Translations under genes and position numbers: made by a program
The notes under the pieces: generated by a model
What the model saw: only the letters and a program-made list of their open reading frames with translations
What the model was told of the DNA's origin: nothing
The model's database searches: none
Source: Salpingoeca rosetta
Lineage: Eukaryota; Protista; Choanoflagellata
NCBI GenBank assembly: GCA_033442325.1
Contig: JAWQFM010000032.1
Span: forward strand, 1-64,000
Reading direction: 5' to 3'
Length of the DNA stretch: 64,000 nt
In this document: positions 22,419 to 34,420 of the stretch, piece after piece
How positions within the stretch are numbered: position 1 is the stretch's first letter
Layout of the letters: each line of letters begins with the position of its first letter

Positions 22419-25400
22419 ATGTCCGGCGGAGACAACAGAGCGAGGGAGGAGGTGGAGGCGTTGCTGGCGCAGACGAAGGTGACGGATTGGGTGAAGAACC
22501 GGATCAGGGCCATCGCCAACAACACGTGTGGGGAGATAGCAGAGTGAGTGCAAAGGCAACCAAAACGACATGCATGTTGGAACATGCATGCATGTGGTGG
22601 AGAGAAGGACACTTCTTGTGGTTGTGCTTGTGCTTATTCTCCCTCTCTCTCTCTCTGCTTGGCTTGTCCTTGTGTTGCAATGAGCTTGGTGTGGCTTGCT
22701 GTTGGGTGTTCACGTGTGCGTGTCCTGTCCCCTCGCACCGCCCGGACACACTGTGTGTGTTTGTGACAGGTTGTGACTGGCACCCTCATGTTTTTGCTCT
22801 GTGTATCCTCAGTCTTCTTGCTCATTTCATGACATACCATTTGAAATTGCAGCTTGGGTCGTGATGGCCTCGGCGACATTGGGGCGCGTGCGGTGGCCGA
22901 GGCGCTCAAGGACAACACCTGCCTCAAAGGACTCGCGTGCGTGGTGATGATGAATCTGCATCGTGTGACATGCATGGTTGATTGGGATGGCGGTGTTGCA
23001 CGTTGCGCCCCTTTCCTCCCCTGCTTGCGCATGTTTGGACGTGTGTTCACCGTCGCTCCCTGCGGTTCTTGTGTGCCTGCACAGCCTGTGGGACAATTCC
23101 ATCGGCGATGAGGGCGCTGTGGCGTTGGCGGAGATGCTGAAGCACAACACGACCCTCACAGGACTCGAGTGAGTGTGTACACACACACACACATGCACAT
23201 GTATGCTGCGTCACTGCCGTTGCACCTTATCATGTGCACATGTGTATGGGTGCAACGACTGTGTTGTCACCCACATGAATCATCATCACGCACTCACTCA
23301 CTCACTCTTCCTCACCCATGTGGCATCATCCCTCTGCGTGGCATCATACCGTCTTGACAGCCTGTGGCGCAATTCCATCGGCCCTGAGGGCGCTGTGGCG
23401 TTGGCGGAGATGCTGAAGCACAACACGGCCCTCGAACAGCTCTTGTGAGTTTGAACACACACGCATGCACGAAGGCACCCGCTTTGAGCATGTGTGCATG
23501 TGGTTGTGCACGTCTGCAGCAGGCGCGCTGGCTGTTTGCCACCCCATGTGCTCGCCGCCCCCATCCCTCCTGCTCACCACCGCGTATGCTGTCACTGACC
23601 TCCCACTCCTCACTCCTCTCTCTTGTGTGTACACAGCCTGATGAGCAACCGCATCGGTCCTGAGGGCGCTGCGGCGTTGGCGGAGATGCTGAAGCACAAC
23701 ACGACCCTCGAAGAACTCTAGTGAGTGTGGACACGCACACATGCACATGTATGCTGCGTCACTGCCTGTTGCACCTTTATCATGTGCACATGTGTGGATT
23801 GATGACTGTGTTGCCACCCACAACAATCATCATCACGCACTCACTCACTCTTCCTCACCCATGTGGCATCATCCCCCCGCGTGGCTTCCACCATACCGTC
23901 TTGACAGCCTGAACAACAACTCCATGGGCGATGAGGGCGCTGTGGCGTTGGCGGAGATGCTGAAGCACAACACGACCATGACATGGCTCGAGTGAGTGTG
24001 GACACGCACACATGCACATGTATGCTGCGTCACTGCGGTTGCACCTTATCACGTGCACATGTGCCCATGTGTGGATTGATGACTGTGTTGCCACCCACAG
24101 CAATCATCATCACGCTCTTCCTCACCCATGTGGCATCATCGCCCTGTGTGGCATCCACCATACCGTCTTGACAGCCTGAACAACAACTCCATCGGCGATA
24201 AGGGCGCCGTGGCGTTGGCGGAGATGCTGAAGCACAACACGACCCTCGAAGAACTCTAGTGAGTGTGGACACGCACACATGCACATGTATGCTGCGTCAC
24301 TGCGGTTGCACGTTATCATGCGCTCATGTGTGGTTGATGACTGTGTTGCCACCCACAACAATCATCACTCGCGCACTCAATCACACTTCCTCATCCATGT
24401 GGCATCATCGCCCTGCGTGGCATTCACCATACCGTCTTGACAGCCTGTACAACAACCGCATCGGCGATGAGGGCGCTGTGGCGTTGGCGGAGATGCTAAA
24501 GCACAACACGGCCCTCGAAGAACTCTAGTGAGTGGAAGCTCCTCTTTGCAATGTGTGTCTTTAGGCGCTTCTTCTGCAATACCCATGTGCAGATCAAGGC
24601 ACCGCAAGCCACCCACGATGTCTGTGCGACTTGCTTGTTTGTCCAACCAACAAATGCTTCCATCCTTCATATGTGCCACAAGTGCTGTCACATCCTGTGC
24701 AACTGGCATTTTCCCCCTTTGCTTCCGCCATTGTGACTTCAATGTCGTAGGACCTGATGTGCGAGCGAGTACACGTGCACGTGATCCATCTGCAACCCAC
24801 TTTCATCCATGACACTGACACGTGTTGCTTGCCCACCCGTTCCCCTGCTCTTCCAACATGCATTTCTTGCCACTTGCAGCTTGGATAACAACTCCATCAC
24901 CCCGGTTGGCGGTGCGGCGCTGGGTGCCGCACTGGACGAAAACCGCACGCTGTCTCGGCTTGAGTACGTCGATTGCGTTGCGCCTGCCTCATGAACGCCT
25001 GTGTCCTGTTGTGGATTTGTGTGACCAATCGCCACTCTTTTGAGTGCACGTCACACTGTGTGTTTTCCTCTTTACTTGCTTGTATTTCTCCACAACCCTA
25101 ACCACCAACCCTCCTGACCCACACACCGCACTTGCTGCCTGTTCCCAACCACACGCTACCACCACGTGTCCTCGTTCAGCATCGAGAAGAACTCCACCGC
25201 CACCGCCCGCGCCTTTGGTGCCGCGCTGCCCGTCGACCGCGTGCTCGATACAGGCAACTGGTCAGTCCACGTGTGCTTCCCCTTCCTGTCATGCGCTTTC
25301 TCTCTTCTCTTAACCCTTTTTTCTCACGTGCTGCGTTCTGGTTGCGTCTCATCTCGTGTGCGCACAGGTTCGGCGACGATGAGCGCAACGTCTTCAACGA

Positions 25401-32352: not shown

Positions 32353-34420
32353 GGTGTGTGGGTGTGTGTGTGTGTGTGTGTGTGTGTGCACACGCGTGCG
32401 ACTGCTTGGCCGTAGTAGTCGAGGAGTTTCGTGGTAGCCCCACCACTTCAACCCTCAATCACGCATTGTGCGCTTACACCTGCCATCCTTGCTGCCCCTG
32501 CTTCTTGCATGTCCAAAGGTACCTCCACACGCGCGGCGATCTGCTCTGGTATTCCAGCACACCCTCCCTGGCGGATTTCGTCTTCGTCGACCCCAACTGG
32601 CTGCTTCATGACGTGCTGGGGAGAGCGCTGACACCGGACGGCGTGCAGCAAGGCTCCATCACCACGAAAGGTGTCGTGACATTCACGGACCTGGAAACCG
32701 CATTCCGAGGCATTGCCAGCGCAGATCTCGTCATCAACGTCCTGCAGCACACGCTCCTCTGCTTTGAACTGCCGCCTTCTGACGATGGGCAACGGCGATT
32801 CATGCTGCCGAGCCGCGTTGAGGAGGAGGTCGATCTCACAACCGCCTGGTCACAAGGCGAGTGGCTGCTATATGCCGGACGACGGCTGGTGGTCGAGAAC
32901 AACGCGCTTGCGCTGCCGCCTGGCTTCTTCCCACACGTGCAGACACTGCTGCACAAATCGTTTGGCGCAACACTGAAGGTGTGGAAGGATGCCTTCTGCT
33001 GCAAGCGTGATGGTGTGCAGTGTCTTGGACTACTGCGGGACGACCGAGCAGTGGATGTGTGGGTGAGGGCACCCGGCGGCGCAGAGTGCAGCGCTTGGAG
33101 CTGCATGATGGAGGTAAGGACGAACAGATGTGCGTGCATTGACGCGCATATGTGTGCATGCGTGTCTTGCCAATGTGATGTTCATGGGTGGGTTGTAGCT
33201 GAATCTGCGTTTGTCTTCACAGTGATTTCCTTCATTCTTTCACGTCCGTTTACTTTCACAAACCACCACAGATCGTCTCCTTCCTGCAAGAAGAGGCACG
33301 TGGCATCGATCACGTCCAGCACGTCCTCAGCGTGAATCACCTGAAACAGCACCGCGATTACCCGGCCAGCCGCCCCATCACAGACCTGGAGGACCTCGCC
33401 TTGCATGGCCTCGTCGACTTTGCAAACGATGACAATCCACCCGCGCGACTCAGGGATCTCCTCGTACATAACCCCATCCTGACAGCACCCTGGCACCAAC
33501 CGGGCCACGAGTGGCACCATGCTGCCTGGCGGCTCGACGACAGCTTTGACCGCCAGTTGCAGTGGACTGGACCTGGCGATCATGACGTGTACTCTGCGCC
33601 ACTGCCATCAGACACAGACCTGTATCGATGGATTGAGAGTCAGATGGGGCCAGGCCTCACCTTGTCGCGCGTGGAGATGACTAAGTCCACCACGATGCTG
33701 CGGGCGTTCAAAGCGCAAGTGGAGCGTTCAGCCAAGAAACGTGGTGATCCAAACACTACCAATACAGTTGCTGCAGACCCTGCCAACCCCGTTGCTGCAG
33801 ACGCGACCAACCCCTTCAACAAGGACTTTGGGGCTGGCGATCCGGACAAGCAAGGCATGCTTGACCGGCTCAAGACGCAGTTTGCAGAAACACCCGATGG
33901 CGTGAATTACGTCAACGTCCTTGTGGCTTGGCATGGGTGTGATGAGGCTGTCGCCGACAACATCACCGCCACAGGAACCGCCAACCTCAGCAGCCCAAAC
34001 GACCCTGGCTTCTTTGGCGCTGGCATCTATCTCACGCCGCAGACAAGCTATGCCGCAGGCTACTCAACACGCCTGCTGACTGGGAATTGGCGCCAACCAA
34101 ACGCAGACGGTGAGCACGTGATGCTCTTGTGTGCTGTCAGCGTCGGCCTGGCATACCCCATCACCAGAAGGGCAGATTACCCATCGTCTGGGCAAAACAA
34201 GTGCACGAAGTTCTGGGGCAAGAAGCTGGAGACTGGCTGCGACACCCACTACATCCAAGTCACAAAGCACATGGGCTACCAATCCACCAGAGCGCCCACA
34301 CCTGGCACCTTTGACTTTGAGGAGTATGTGGTCTCGCAAGAGGCCCAGGTCTTGCCATTTGCCAAGGTGTTTGTCAAGGTGGACAGGGTCGTGCTGGCTT
34401 CGCAGCTCACAACCCCTTAG
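22419..34420 (+). CDS. Multidomain Roco protein: LRR-ankyrin-LRR-ankyrin-TIR-SAM-Roc GTPase-COR-PARP-like ADP-ribosyltransferase (~2158 aa, 33 exons)
   Basis: Phase-consistent model: 22419-22543, 22853-22936, 23085-23168, 23361-23444, 23637-23720, 23908-23991, 24175-24258, 24444-24527, 24880-24963, 25180-25260, 25368-25518, 25616-25980, 26106-26289, 26422-26478, 26617-26727, 26871-26969, 27154-27231, 27340-27425, 27543-27626, 27869-27952, 28075-28158, 28277-28360, 28475-28594, 28749-28812, 28937-29017, 29330-29428, 29544-29616, 29738-29798, 29978-30641, 30862-31145, 31357-32298, 32519-33113, 33272-34420 (6477 nt, divisible by 3). Motifs: LxxNxIGDEGAVALAEMLKHN; TALHAAVRTG...LLLSHGADAN; YEVFMSYR; WLNRHSL...GIDSL...LREAGVKLG; GDDGIGKST, RTPGI, DFGGQ, TKRD; YLHTRGDLLWY...FVDPNWL; WHG...FGAGIY...EEYVV. 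Confidence 0.88.
23085..24527 (+). repeat. Tandem array of LRR exon+intron units (267-276 bp period, six near-identical 84-bp exons)
   Basis: Exon starts 23085, 23361, 23637, 23908, 24175, 24444; shared core GGCGTTGGCGGAGATGCTGAAGCACAACACG; four of the five internal introns are close copies (GTGAGTGTG...ATACCGTCTTGACAG). Confidence 0.95.

What the first reader, a model, noticed from the sequence alone, without database searches (positions are those of the whole stretch)
22419..34420. Candidate innate-immune receptor: LRR-ANK-LRR-ANK-TIR-SAM-Roc-COR-PARP in one protein
Seen: a single phase-consistent 33-exon frame joins sensor repeats, a TIR-like domain, a SAM domain (exon 30862-31145, absent from the ORF track), an intact Roc GTPase, COR and a C-terminal ADP-ribosyltransferase. 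Known: classic Roco proteins (LRRK2, DAPK1, Dictyostelium Rocos) use kinase or death domains as output; SAM plus TIR is the SARM1 NAD+-destruction module; PARP folds consume NAD+. Inference: an NLR-like sensor-switch-effector where a GTPase replaces the NACHT ATPase and the output is ADP-ribosylation. I do not know of this architecture being characterised.
Basis: partly seen in the sequence, partly recalled or inferred. Interest (0 to 1): 0.93.

Follow-up and report, generated by a model that had tools for sequence, protein, structure and literature searches.

The report
Chimeric choanoflagellate Roco protein with PARP output
This is a real, transcribed gene of about 2,137 codons in the choanoflagellate Salpingoeca rosetta that joins repeat "sensor" domains, a probably inactive TIR domain and a SAM-like domain to a Roc-COR GTPase switch and a PARP-type ADP-ribosyltransferase; its family looks like an immune-receptor repertoire in the closest unicellular relatives of animals, but no function has been tested.

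Summary
RNA reads and transcript contigs from three studies confirm 16 introns between 27425 and 33272. Splicing them gives one open frame of 1,513 codons, running from the second LRR block through ANK, TIR, SAM, Roc and COR to PARP and ending at the stop at 34418-34420. My full model has 35 exons and 2,137 aa; exons 12-19 are predicted only.

Pfam supports Roc, PARP and one ANK repeat above threshold. COR-A and SAM_2 fall just below it. The TIR exon is 58-71% identical to paralogs that match TIR_2.

New points:
- The organism is Salpingoeca rosetta.
- Roc-COR-PARP is a family of 12 loci, already in databases as "hypothetical proteins".
- This gene is a fusion. Paralogs end just after SAM, and here that stop codon overlaps the splice donor that joins SAM to the Roc exon.
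- The TIR has Gln where a tested paralog has its catalytic Glu, so it is probably enzymatically dead.
- The PARP domain keeps H-Y-E and folds like PARP1 and tankyrase.

An immune role is plausible by analogy but untested. I rate it a new variant of the Roco family.

The parts
22419..22543 (+). Exon 1: start codon and a 41-aa N-terminal segment shared by the whole family
   Evidence: It is 79-82% identical to exon 1 of paralog loci and to the N-termini of PTSG_09285 and PTSG_13043. The donor is GTGAGT.
22853..25260 (+). First LRR block: nine RNI-type LRR exons, eight of 84 nt and one cap exon of 81 nt (25180-25260), all phase 2, one repeat per exon
   Evidence: Exon plus intron units of about 270 nt are tandemly repeated. 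LRR_6 scores about 1e-3 per exon and 1e-17 in paralog P0001. The DP model places them, and they are collinear with paralogs.
25368..27425 (+). Exons 11-19: exon 11 is conserved in paralogs; then a region unique to this gene with ANK-like exons (26617-26727, 26871-26969, 27154-27245, 27360-27425)
   Evidence: Exon 11 matches paralogs at 40-48%. Exons 12-19 are predicted only. There are no paralogs of 25784-25978 or 26107-26289 in the genome. Ank_3 E 0.06 on 26871-26969. The end of exon 19 at 27425 is confirmed by a contig loose end.
27543..28594 (+). Second LRR block: five phase-2 exons (4 x 84 nt and 1 x 120 nt)
   Evidence: All introns are seen in RNA. LRR_6 E 0.0055 on 28076-28156.
28749..29616 (+). 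Second ANK block (exons 25-29; about three repeats)
   Evidence: All introns are seen in RNA. Pfam Ank 7.3e-8, 32.7 bits, on 29330-29428.
29738..30641 (+). TIR domain (exons 30-31). Gln replaces the catalytic Glu at 30186-30188 (NVLLQW), and there is a 6-aa deletion before the ACxxALQ motif
   Evidence: RNA joints 29798/29978 and 30641/30862. It is 58-71% identical to 11 paralog TIR exons, 8 of which hit TIR_2 (best 1.3e-6). Atlas neighbours are all TIR_2 (0.94). The tested paralog has its catalytic Glu at this position.
30862..31145 (+). SAM-like domain exon. The donor GTAAGG at 31146 overlaps the in-frame stop TAA at 31147-31149
   Evidence: SAM_2 E 1.2e-3, 19.4 bits, profile positions 7-65 of 66. 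Paralogs end 5-15 residues after this domain. Sequence read.
31357..32298 (+). Roc GTPase exon: P-loop GDDGIGKS 31469-31492, DFGGQ 31676-31690, TKRD 31913-31924. An alternative acceptor at 31348 adds 3 aa
   Evidence: Pfam Roc 1.8e-9, 38.3 bits. Motif positions. Joints 31145/31357 (4 reads plus contigs) and 31145/31348 (3 reads).
32519..33113 (+). COR exon
   Evidence: COR-A 4.8e-8, 33.5 bits. The GC-AG intron 32299-32518 is inferred from a read loose end. It is 65-84% identical to paralogs.
33272..34420 (+). Last exon: linker plus PARP-type ART domain. His 33932-33934, Tyr 34028-34030, Glu 34322-34324; stop 34418-34420
   Evidence: Pfam PARP 5.8e-10, 39.4 bits. AlphaFold model pLDDT 80.5. Foldseek matches PARP1 ART and tankyrase at prob 1.0, TM (target) 0.6-0.75. 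H221, Y253 and E351 are invariant or nearly so in a 25-sequence family alignment.

Best explanation
SHOWN. This is one expressed gene of Salpingoeca rosetta encoding a cytosolic-looking multidomain Roco protein of about 2,137 aa. Its order is: family N-terminus, 9 RNI-type LRRs, a unique region with ANK-like repeats, 5 LRRs, about 3 ANK repeats, TIR, SAM-like domain, Roc, COR, PARP-type ADP-ribosyltransferase. It belongs to a large modular family in this genome: 12 linked Roc-COR-PARP loci, at least 44 copies of the TIR exon, and many genes of the LRR-Roc-COR-TIR-SAM type. It is a fusion. Paralogs of the TIR-SAM type stop just after SAM, and paralogs of the PARP type splice the LRR cap exon straight onto the Roc exon. 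Here the old stop codon overlaps a donor that splices SAM to Roc. The Roc exon has no in-frame ATG of its own before the P-loop.

INFERRED MECHANISM. The LRR and ANK arrays bind a ligand or a guarded host factor. The Roc-COR module has intact G1, G3 and G4 motifs and acts as the nucleotide-dependent switch, as in other Roco proteins. It controls the C-terminal PARP domain, whose H-Y-E triad is intact, and that domain ADP-ribosylates targets or itself using NAD+. The TIR carries Gln at the catalytic Glu position, so it probably no longer makes cADPR. Together with SAM it would then serve as an oligomerisation or docking module, possibly towards the many catalytically competent TIR-SAM paralogs. 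The biological role is most likely surveillance or defence against microbes or viruses, in a lineage that lacks true NLRs.
For: Single transcript: RNA joints, contigs and one ORF. Reads have the first mate on the minus strand only, which means + strand RNA in usual stranded libraries. Word shares fit the model. Domains. G motifs and their positions. PARP triad: invariant H221, Y253 and E351; the HMM alignment to PARP12 puts H and Y on its HG and GxY motifs; spacings of 32 and 98 residues compare with 34 and 92 in PARP1 (my knowledge). Family: 12 loci with Roc about 2 kb upstream of PARP; annotated paralogs PTSG_13043, 09285, 08728, 08520, 09099, 10355 and 09169; at least 44 TIR exon copies; shared N-terminal block. 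Fusion: paralog stops after SAM; TAA overlapping the donor; paralogs go from the LRR cap directly to Roc; an unfused tandem pair at C13. TIR: the tested S. rosetta TIR (protein of 1,352 aa, catalytic Glu 1118, cADPR producer) is the C13 paralog, and its Glu is the E of NVLLEW, where this gene has Q. Context: bona fide NLRs are reported absent from choanoflagellates (PMC3879445); brown-algal LRR-ROCO genes with one-LRR phase-2 exons have been proposed as immune receptors (PMC3341825, PMC11378527).
Against: There is no functional, localisation or challenge data, so the immune role rests on analogy. Eight exons (25645-27425) are predicted only, and the link of the first LRR block to the rest rests on contig length, word share and family collinearity, not on reads across the junctions. 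COR-A and SAM_2 are just under Pfam's curated cut-offs. The TIR exon itself hits no Pfam TIR model, and its AlphaFold model was useless (pLDDT 43). Contigs over Roc-COR-PARP have 2-3 times the depth of the upstream contig; this could reflect words shared with paralogs, 3' bias, or an additional shorter transcript. An H-Y-E triad does not prove activity. Whether Roc regulates the PARP domain is pure inference.
Confidence: 0.55

Rival explanations
1. Two functional genes, LRR-ANK-LRR-ANK-TIR-SAM and Roc-COR-PARP, whose joined transcript is a minor read-through by-product. The proteins that matter would be the separate ones.
For: The in-frame stop TAA lies right at the SAM exon donor, and paralogs end there. 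A low-depth contig covers the intron (2.3 against 29.4). Depth is 2-3 times higher over Roc-COR-PARP. At C13 the two gene types are separate.
Against: Spliced joints dominate: contigs at full depth in two studies plus 7 reads. The Roc exon starts mid-codon, has an in-frame stop at 31328-31330 and has no ATG before the P-loop. No exon 1, LRR or cap exons of a second gene lie between 31146 and 31356. The fusion keeps the frame over 35 exons.
Confidence: 0.1
2. A genuine single protein, but a non-immune signalling Roco. For example, it might regulate the cytoskeleton, cell state or stress and NAD+ metabolism, or sense bacterial cues for feeding or development, with ADP-ribosylation as an ordinary regulatory modification.
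For: Characterised Roco proteins (LRRK2, DAPK1, Dictyostelium Rocos) act in trafficking, cytoskeleton and cell death rather than pathogen recognition (my knowledge; review PMC6337361). PARPs of this clade are fused to ARM, PH, actin, ANF-receptor and NHL/EGF modules in other protists. S. rosetta is known for developmental responses to bacteria (my knowledge).
Against: The family has the hallmarks of conflict genes. It shows copy-number expansion, one-LRR-per-exon cassettes, module swapping between TIR-SAM and PARP outputs, pseudogenised copies (two PARP exons with TAG), and a TIR paralog that makes cADPR.
Confidence: 0.25
3. A young chimeric gene without a selected function of its own. It would be a neutral product of deletion between tandem family members, already decaying (TIR Glu to Gln, a deletion in the TIR, and a unique linker of unclear coding value).
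For: The TIR differs from all 11 paralogs at an otherwise nearly invariant Glu and has a 6-aa deletion. The 25.6-27.4 kb region has no relatives in the genome. The protein was not found among database proteins of 643-2,187 aa.
Against: The frame is open through 2,137 codons and 34 introns. The gene is expressed in at least three studies. The Roc motifs and the PARP triad are intact. Catalytically dead TIRs are common as adaptors (my knowledge).
Confidence: 0.1

Closest known systems
S. rosetta LRR-Roc-COR-PARP paralogs (PTSG_13043/F2UPL2, PTSG_09285, PTSG_08728, PTSG_09099, PTSG_10355, PTSG_09169/F2UMX5, PTSG_08520)
   Same: They share the same N-terminal exon, the 84-nt LRR exons and the Roc-COR-PARP core. 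Identity is 53-83% over Roc, COR and PARP.
   Different: The paralogs are 800-1,250 aa and splice the LRR cap exon directly to the Roc exon. This gene carries 22 extra exons (unique region, ANK, LRR, ANK, TIR, SAM) between them. None of them is characterised; they are annotated as hypothetical proteins.
S. rosetta LRR-Roc-COR-TIR(-SAM) proteins, e.g. UniProt F2UPN6/F2UB80 (1,352 aa), tested in bioRxiv 10.64898/2026.04.20.719644
   Same: The TIR and SAM modules are homologous (about 70% and 67% identity to the C13 copy). The N-terminal LRR block is the same.
   Different: There the TIR-SAM is the C-terminal output after Roc-COR, and the TIR has the catalytic Glu and makes cADPR in E. coli. Here TIR-SAM lies upstream of Roc-COR, Glu is replaced by Gln, and the output is PARP.
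Brown-algal LRR-ROCO candidate immune receptors (Ectocarpus, Saccharina; PMC3341825, PMC11378527)
   Same: LRR array plus Roc-COR. There is one LRR per exon, all exons are phase 2 and so can be shuffled, and the family is expanded. An NLR-like role is proposed without functional proof.
   Different: Their exons are 72 nt (23-aa LRR) against 84 nt (28-aa RNI-type) here. The algal proteins have no enzymatic output domain. They are in an unrelated lineage, so the cassette design is probably convergent.
LRRK2 / LRRK1 / DAPK1 and Dictyostelium or bacterial Roco proteins
   Same: A Roc-COR tandem flanked by ANK and LRR repeats, with an enzymatic domain C-terminal to COR that the GTPase is thought to control.
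   Different: The output is a kinase or death domain, not a PARP. The Roco review PMC6337361 does not mention PARP, ADP-ribosylation or TIR.
SARM1
   Same: SAM and TIR occur in one protein together with a repeat-type regulatory region, and the chemistry is NAD+-linked.
   Different: SARM1 is ARM-SAM-SAM-TIR with an active Glu (my knowledge). Here the order is TIR-SAM, there is a single SAM-like domain below Pfam threshold, Gln sits at the catalytic position, and there is no ARM. It is not an orthologue.
NLR / STAND receptors (plant TNLs, animal NLRs)
   Same: The logic is the same: repeat sensor, nucleotide switch, effector. TIR is an associated module, and the family is expanded and modular.
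   Different: The switch is a Ras-like Roc GTPase with COR, not a NACHT or NB-ARC STAND ATPase. No such domain was found in any exon. This is an analogy only.

Membership tests
Roco (Roc-COR) proteins | A Roc (Ras of complex) GTPase domain | tested here: met
   Pfam Roc 38.3 bits against cut-off 27, E 1.8e-9. G1 GDDGIGKS, G3 DFGGQ and G4 TKRD are present.
Roco (Roc-COR) proteins | A COR domain immediately C-terminal to Roc | tested here: met
   COR-A E 4.8e-8 in the next exon. At 33.5 bits it is slightly under the curated 35.3. The same match is found in annotated paralogs.
PARP / ARTD ADP-ribosyltransferases | PARP catalytic (ART) fold | tested here: met
   Pfam PARP 39.4 bits against 26.7. 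The model has pLDDT 80.5. Foldseek matches PARP1 ART and tankyrase at prob 1.0, E about 1e-9, TM (target) up to 0.75.
PARP / ARTD ADP-ribosyltransferases | H-Y-E catalytic triad | tested here: met
   H221 (WHG), Y253 (GIY) and E351 (FEEYVV) of the last exon are invariant or nearly so in 25 relatives. H and Y align to the HG and GxY motifs of PARP12. The assignment of Glu rests on motif and spacing, not on a residue-level structural alignment.
TIR domain | Match to a TIR profile or homology to TIR domains | tested here: met
   The exon itself has no Pfam hit. It is 58-71% identical to 11 paralog exons, 8 of which hit TIR_2 (best 1.3e-6). One of those paralogs is an experimentally active TIR. 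Atlas neighbours are all TIR_2.
TIR domain (enzymatic NADase/cyclase subclass) | Catalytic glutamate | tested here: not met
   Gln (NVLLQW) stands where all 11 paralogs have Glu. In the tested paralog this is Glu1118, and the preprint states that mutation of the catalytic Glu abolishes activity.
SAM domain | Match to a SAM profile | tested here: inconclusive
   SAM_2 E 1.2e-3, 19.4 bits against cut-off 20.5, covering profile positions 7-65 of 66. Atlas neighbours are mixed, with SAM families at 0.82-0.83. No structure was predicted.
NLR / STAND receptors | NACHT or NB-ARC STAND NTPase between sensor and effector | tested here: not met
   No such Pfam family appeared in any exon or ORF scanned. 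The nucleotide-binding module is Roc.
SARM1 orthologues | ARM-SAM-SAM-TIR order with an active TIR | tested here: not met
   The order is TIR then one SAM-like domain, there is no ARM, and Gln sits at the catalytic site.
Shufflable LRR-ROCO candidate receptors (brown-alga type) | One LRR per symmetric phase-2 exon next to Roc-COR | tested here: met
   There are 13 exons of 84 nt (plus 81 and 120 nt), all entered and left in phase 2. Tandem exon plus intron units are seen. The algal exons are 72 nt, phase 2.

The most novel reading that the evidence does not exclude
Choanoflagellates, which lack true NLRs, run an intracellular immune-receptor repertoire built on Roco GTPases instead. LRR cassettes made of shufflable exons feed a Roc-COR switch whose output is either a cADPR-making TIR-SAM or a PARP-type ADP-ribosyltransferase. 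This gene would be a fused, 'integrated' receptor in which a catalytically dead TIR-SAM docks onto active TIR-SAM paralogs and couples their assemblies to GTP-gated ADP-ribosylation.
Probability: 0.25. Interest if true: 0.85.

Novelty: new variant of a known kind. Interest (0 to 1): 0.66.

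Why it matters
If the reading is right, the nucleotide switch of innate-immune-type receptors has been filled at least three times independently: by NACHT in animals, by NB-ARC in plants, and by Roc-COR here and perhaps in brown algae. The sister group of animals would then own an expanded, modular receptor family with two NAD+-consuming outputs. The Roc-COR-PARP core offers a new and tractable output for asking how Roc-COR controls a neighbouring enzyme, which is the unresolved question behind LRRK2. 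S. rosetta can be transfected and edited, so the family can be tested directly. The fusion, a stop codon converted into a splice donor, is also a clean example of how such architectures arise.

Tried and rejected
1. The AlphaFold model of the TIR exon, using 12 paralog sequences, had pLDDT 43, so it was not used for fold search. The strand with YEVFMSYR lies in the preceding exon and could not be joined by reference.
2. phmmer of the PARP exon against PDB sequences found nothing. A family profile gave only weak hits to SRO1, PARP12 and PARP16. The TIR profile found nothing in the PDB.
3. BLASTP of the TIR exon against PTSG_12838, which carries TIR_2, showed no similarity; that is a different TIR lineage.
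4. I could not recover this gene's own annotated protein. Searches covering 643-2,187 aa found only paralogs, so it may be split, longer, or absent from the older annotation.
5. The S. infusionum protein P0019 had no further relatives by word search, and phmmer with this gene's Roc-COR did not hit it. Its Roc may be degenerate, so 'Roc-COR-PARP outside S. rosetta' is only partly shown: COR-A plus PARP in P0019, and Roc plus a PARP-like domain in P0142 from an unidentified sample.
6. The region 25.6-27.4 kb has no paralogs, so conservation could not refine exons 12-19.
8. Literature searches for Roc-COR with PARP or ADP-ribosyltransferase found no description.
9. The spliced full-length protein was never sent to any tool, because it has no reference. 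All domain tests were done exon by exon.

Full report
1. WHAT IS THERE

The region 22419-34420 (+) is made of short open stretches separated by GT-rich introns of 100-350 nt. The first block is a tandem array of units of about 270 nt. Each unit is an 84-nt exon encoding one RNI-type LRR (consensus L.NNSIGDEGAVALAEMLKHNTTLEEL) plus an intron of about 186 nt. Every one of these exons is entered and left in phase 2.

Pfam on the large exons gives Roc (38.3 bits), COR-A (33.5 bits, E 4.8e-8) and PARP (39.4 bits) in three consecutive exons.

2. RNA EVIDENCE

Public runs of the same organism hold the stretch. I laid two raw stranded RNA-seq runs and the Logan contigs of two runs from other studies on 27420-33419.

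Fourteen joints were reported directly. Three more followed from other data:
- 30641/30862, from the pieces of one contig.
- 32298/32519, from a read loose end (CTTCCACCAAACACTC before 32517).
- 27425/27543, from contig loose ends.

After placing the cuts on GT-AG, or on GC-AG for two introns, the 16 exons from 27543 to 34420 splice into one frame of 1,513 codons with only the terminal stop.

Other points from the reads:
- Reads lie with the first mate on the minus strand only, as expected for + strand RNA in usual stranded libraries.
- A single contig (3,187 nt in one study, 3,163 nt in another) runs from 31507 back through SAM, TIR, ANK and the second LRR block, and 1,182 or 1,158 spliced nt further upstream of 27543.
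- In my model the exons from exon 9 (24880) to 27425 sum to 1,161 nt. The contigs therefore end at the exon 8/9 boundary, exactly where the LRR exons become repetitive for a 31-mer assembler.
- RNA-contig runs hold 0.23-0.25 of the 31-mers of 22300-27542 and 0.60-0.66 of those of 28500-34450. The model predicts 0.25 and 0.645; it would predict about 0.16 for the first stretch if exons 1-8 were silent (and my arithmetic).

3. GENE MODEL

The model has 35 exons, 6,414 nt of CDS and 2,137 aa.
- Exons 20-35 are verified by RNA.
- Exons 1-9 rest on the repeat structure and on annotated paralogs.
- Exons 10-11 rest on conservation in paralogs.
- Exons 12-19 come only from a splice/codon dynamic programme and may be wrong in detail.

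4. DOMAINS

- LRR: LRR_6 scores about 1e-3 per 27-aa exon and 1e-17 summed in a paralog.
- Second ANK block: Pfam Ank 7.3e-8 on exon 28.
- First ANK block: weak (Ank_3 E 0.06) and lies in predicted exons.
- SAM: SAM_2 19.4 bits against a cut-off of 20.5, nearly full length.
- Roc: G1, G3 and G4 motifs are intact.
- PARP: a model built with a 25-sequence family alignment is confident from residue 70 on (pLDDT 80.5). It matches PARP1 ART and tankyrase catalytic domains (Foldseek prob 1.0). H221, Y253 and E351 are invariant or nearly so.
- TIR: the exon has no Pfam hit of its own and its model failed. It is nonetheless 58-71% identical to 11 paralogous exons, 8 of which hit TIR_2. Language-model neighbours are uniformly TIR_2.

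5. ORGANISM AND FAMILY

An exhaustive HMMER search with the last exon found, as best hits, Salpingoeca rosetta proteins PTSG_13043 (LRR-Roc-COR-PARP, 1,170 aa) and PTSG_09169. The genome (55.4 Mb) holds the following:
- 12 loci where a Roc exon lies about 2 kb upstream of a PARP exon on the same strand, plus one truncated copy; two copies carry a TAG.
- At least seven of these loci annotated as hypothetical proteins.
- At least 44 matches to the TIR exon.
- The N-terminal exon, LRR array and cap block shared at about 80% DNA identity by a dozen further genes. Several of these have a COR-like exon about 1.2 kb upstream of TIR, which makes them LRR-Roc-COR-TIR-SAM.

Outside S. rosetta:
- A Salpingoeca infusionum transcript protein has COR-A plus PARP.
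- An unidentified Logan contig encodes Roc plus a PARP-like domain.
- The same PARP clade is fused to ARM, PH, actin, ANF-receptor or NHL/EGF modules in metagenomic proteins.

6. ORIGIN AS A FUSION

- PARP-type paralogs splice the LRR cap exon directly to the Roc exon. Compare PTSG_09285 (…SSTAVARALATL…DSSAKAAYQDRLDLL…) with this gene's exon 10 and exon 33.
- TIR-SAM paralogs stop 5-15 residues after the SAM domain.
- In this gene the SAM exon ends …ACC TC|G TAA GG. The in-frame TAA (31147-31149) overlaps the donor GTAAGG, and the RNA is spliced there to the Roc exon.
- The Roc exon has an in-frame stop at 31328-31330 and no ATG before the P-loop. It therefore cannot be translated as a separate protein with an intact GTPase.
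- On contig C13 the two gene types lie in tandem but unfused, with the LRR exons of the second gene in the 3.5-kb gap. A deletion between such neighbours would produce the present gene.

7. THE TIR IS PROBABLY INACTIVE

A 2026 preprint (10.64898/2026.04.20.719644) reports that an S. rosetta TIR makes cADPR in E. coli and that activity depends on the catalytic Glu. Its Table S4 lists the construct: F2UB80/F2UPN6, a protein of 1,352 aa with TIR at 1034-1255 and Glu 1118.

That sequence is the same as the C13 paralog in my alignment. Counting from residue 1034 places Glu 1118 on the E of NVLLEW. All 11 paralogs have E there, and this gene has Q (30186-30188). It also has a 6-aa deletion upstream.

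A scaffold or docking role is more likely.

8. MECHANISM AND RIVALS

The best-supported reading is a sensor-switch-effector protein in which Roc-COR gates a PARP-type transferase. The architecture is shown. The regulation and the immune role are inferred from three things:
- Roco biology.
- The conflict-gene-like dynamics of the family.
- The reported absence of true NLRs in choanoflagellates (PMC3879445).

Three rivals remain:
- Two proteins with a read-through by-product.
- A non-immune signalling Roco.
- A neutral young chimera.

One observation is unexplained. Contigs over Roc-COR-PARP have 2-3 times the depth of the upstream contig. Clusters of variant positions and loose ends in the Roc exon show that very similar transcripts, from paralogs or strain variants, map there.

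9. NOVELTY

Roco proteins with LRR and ANK repeats are well known. LRR-ROCO genes with one-LRR phase-2 exons have been proposed as immune receptors in brown algae. The TIR-type S. rosetta Roco has just been touched experimentally.

A PARP output on Roc-COR is not mentioned in the Roco review, in the PARP distribution survey, or in any paper found. The proteins themselves have nonetheless been in databases for years with automatic domain labels. I rate the finding a new variant of a known kind. The fused 2,137-aa form appears to be unannotated.

Noticed in passing
window 1-841 (-): The 5' part of a eukaryotic SSU rRNA gene (590.7 bits) lies at the start of the contig, so the window begins inside an rDNA unit.
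   Followed up: partly
window 34837-36369 (-): An intronless 510-aa ORF converges on the gene's 3' end, 417 nt away. It has a weak Trypsin_2 match (E 2e-4, below cut-off). It may be a serine-protease-like neighbour; any relation to the Roco gene is unknown.
   Followed up: no
window 31146-31356: The SAM/Roc intron has two acceptors, 31357 (major) and 31348 (adds Cys-Leu-Ser in frame; 3 of 7 junction reads in X18). A low-depth contig shows some intron retention, which would yield a SAM-terminal protein.
   Followed up: partly
window 31453-31824 and 33049-33086: There are clusters of variant positions and read loose ends in the Roc and COR exons. At 31693, 31696 and 31705 all X17 reads differ from the assembly. 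Very similar transcripts (unassembled paralogs or strain differences) map here, and contigs over Roc-COR-PARP have 2-3 times the depth of the upstream contig.
   Followed up: no
L030 (G000:C13:1698300-1708299, gene on the - strand): This is a tandem pair: an LRR-Roc-COR-TIR-SAM gene, whose TIR is the one tested in the 2026 preprint, lies directly upstream of an LRR-Roc-COR-PARP gene whose PARP exon carries a TAG. It is the unfused counterpart of the window's gene.
   Followed up: partly
runs X17 and X18 on window 27420-33419: Two runs of one 2026 study, read to equal depth, differ about 7-fold in reads on this gene (117 against 849). This may reflect condition-dependent expression; the conditions are not known to me.
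   Followed up: no
L054 (Logan SRR22388124 contig, 6,732 nt), gene 2445-6671: An intronless 1,408-aa protein (P0142) of unknown organism has an N-terminal Roc (GDSNVGKT, DYGGQ) and a C-terminal PARP-like domain of the same clade.
   Followed up: partly
proteins P0003, P0005 (ENA metagenomes): The closest non-choanoflagellate relatives of the PARP exon (46-54% identity, including the region before the ART core) are fused to LRRK2-type ARM repeats instead of Roc-COR.
   Followed up: no
window 57431-58525 (+): An ORF with weak AAA_16 and DUF815 P-loop matches (E about 1e-6). It may be part of another NTPase gene in the window.
   Followed up: no
window 24800-25058 and L053 875-1128 (G000:C36): Exon 9 plus part of its flanking introns is 96% identical to a copy on contig C36. 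This is far above the family average of about 80% and suggests recent gene conversion or duplication of a single LRR cassette.
   Followed up: no
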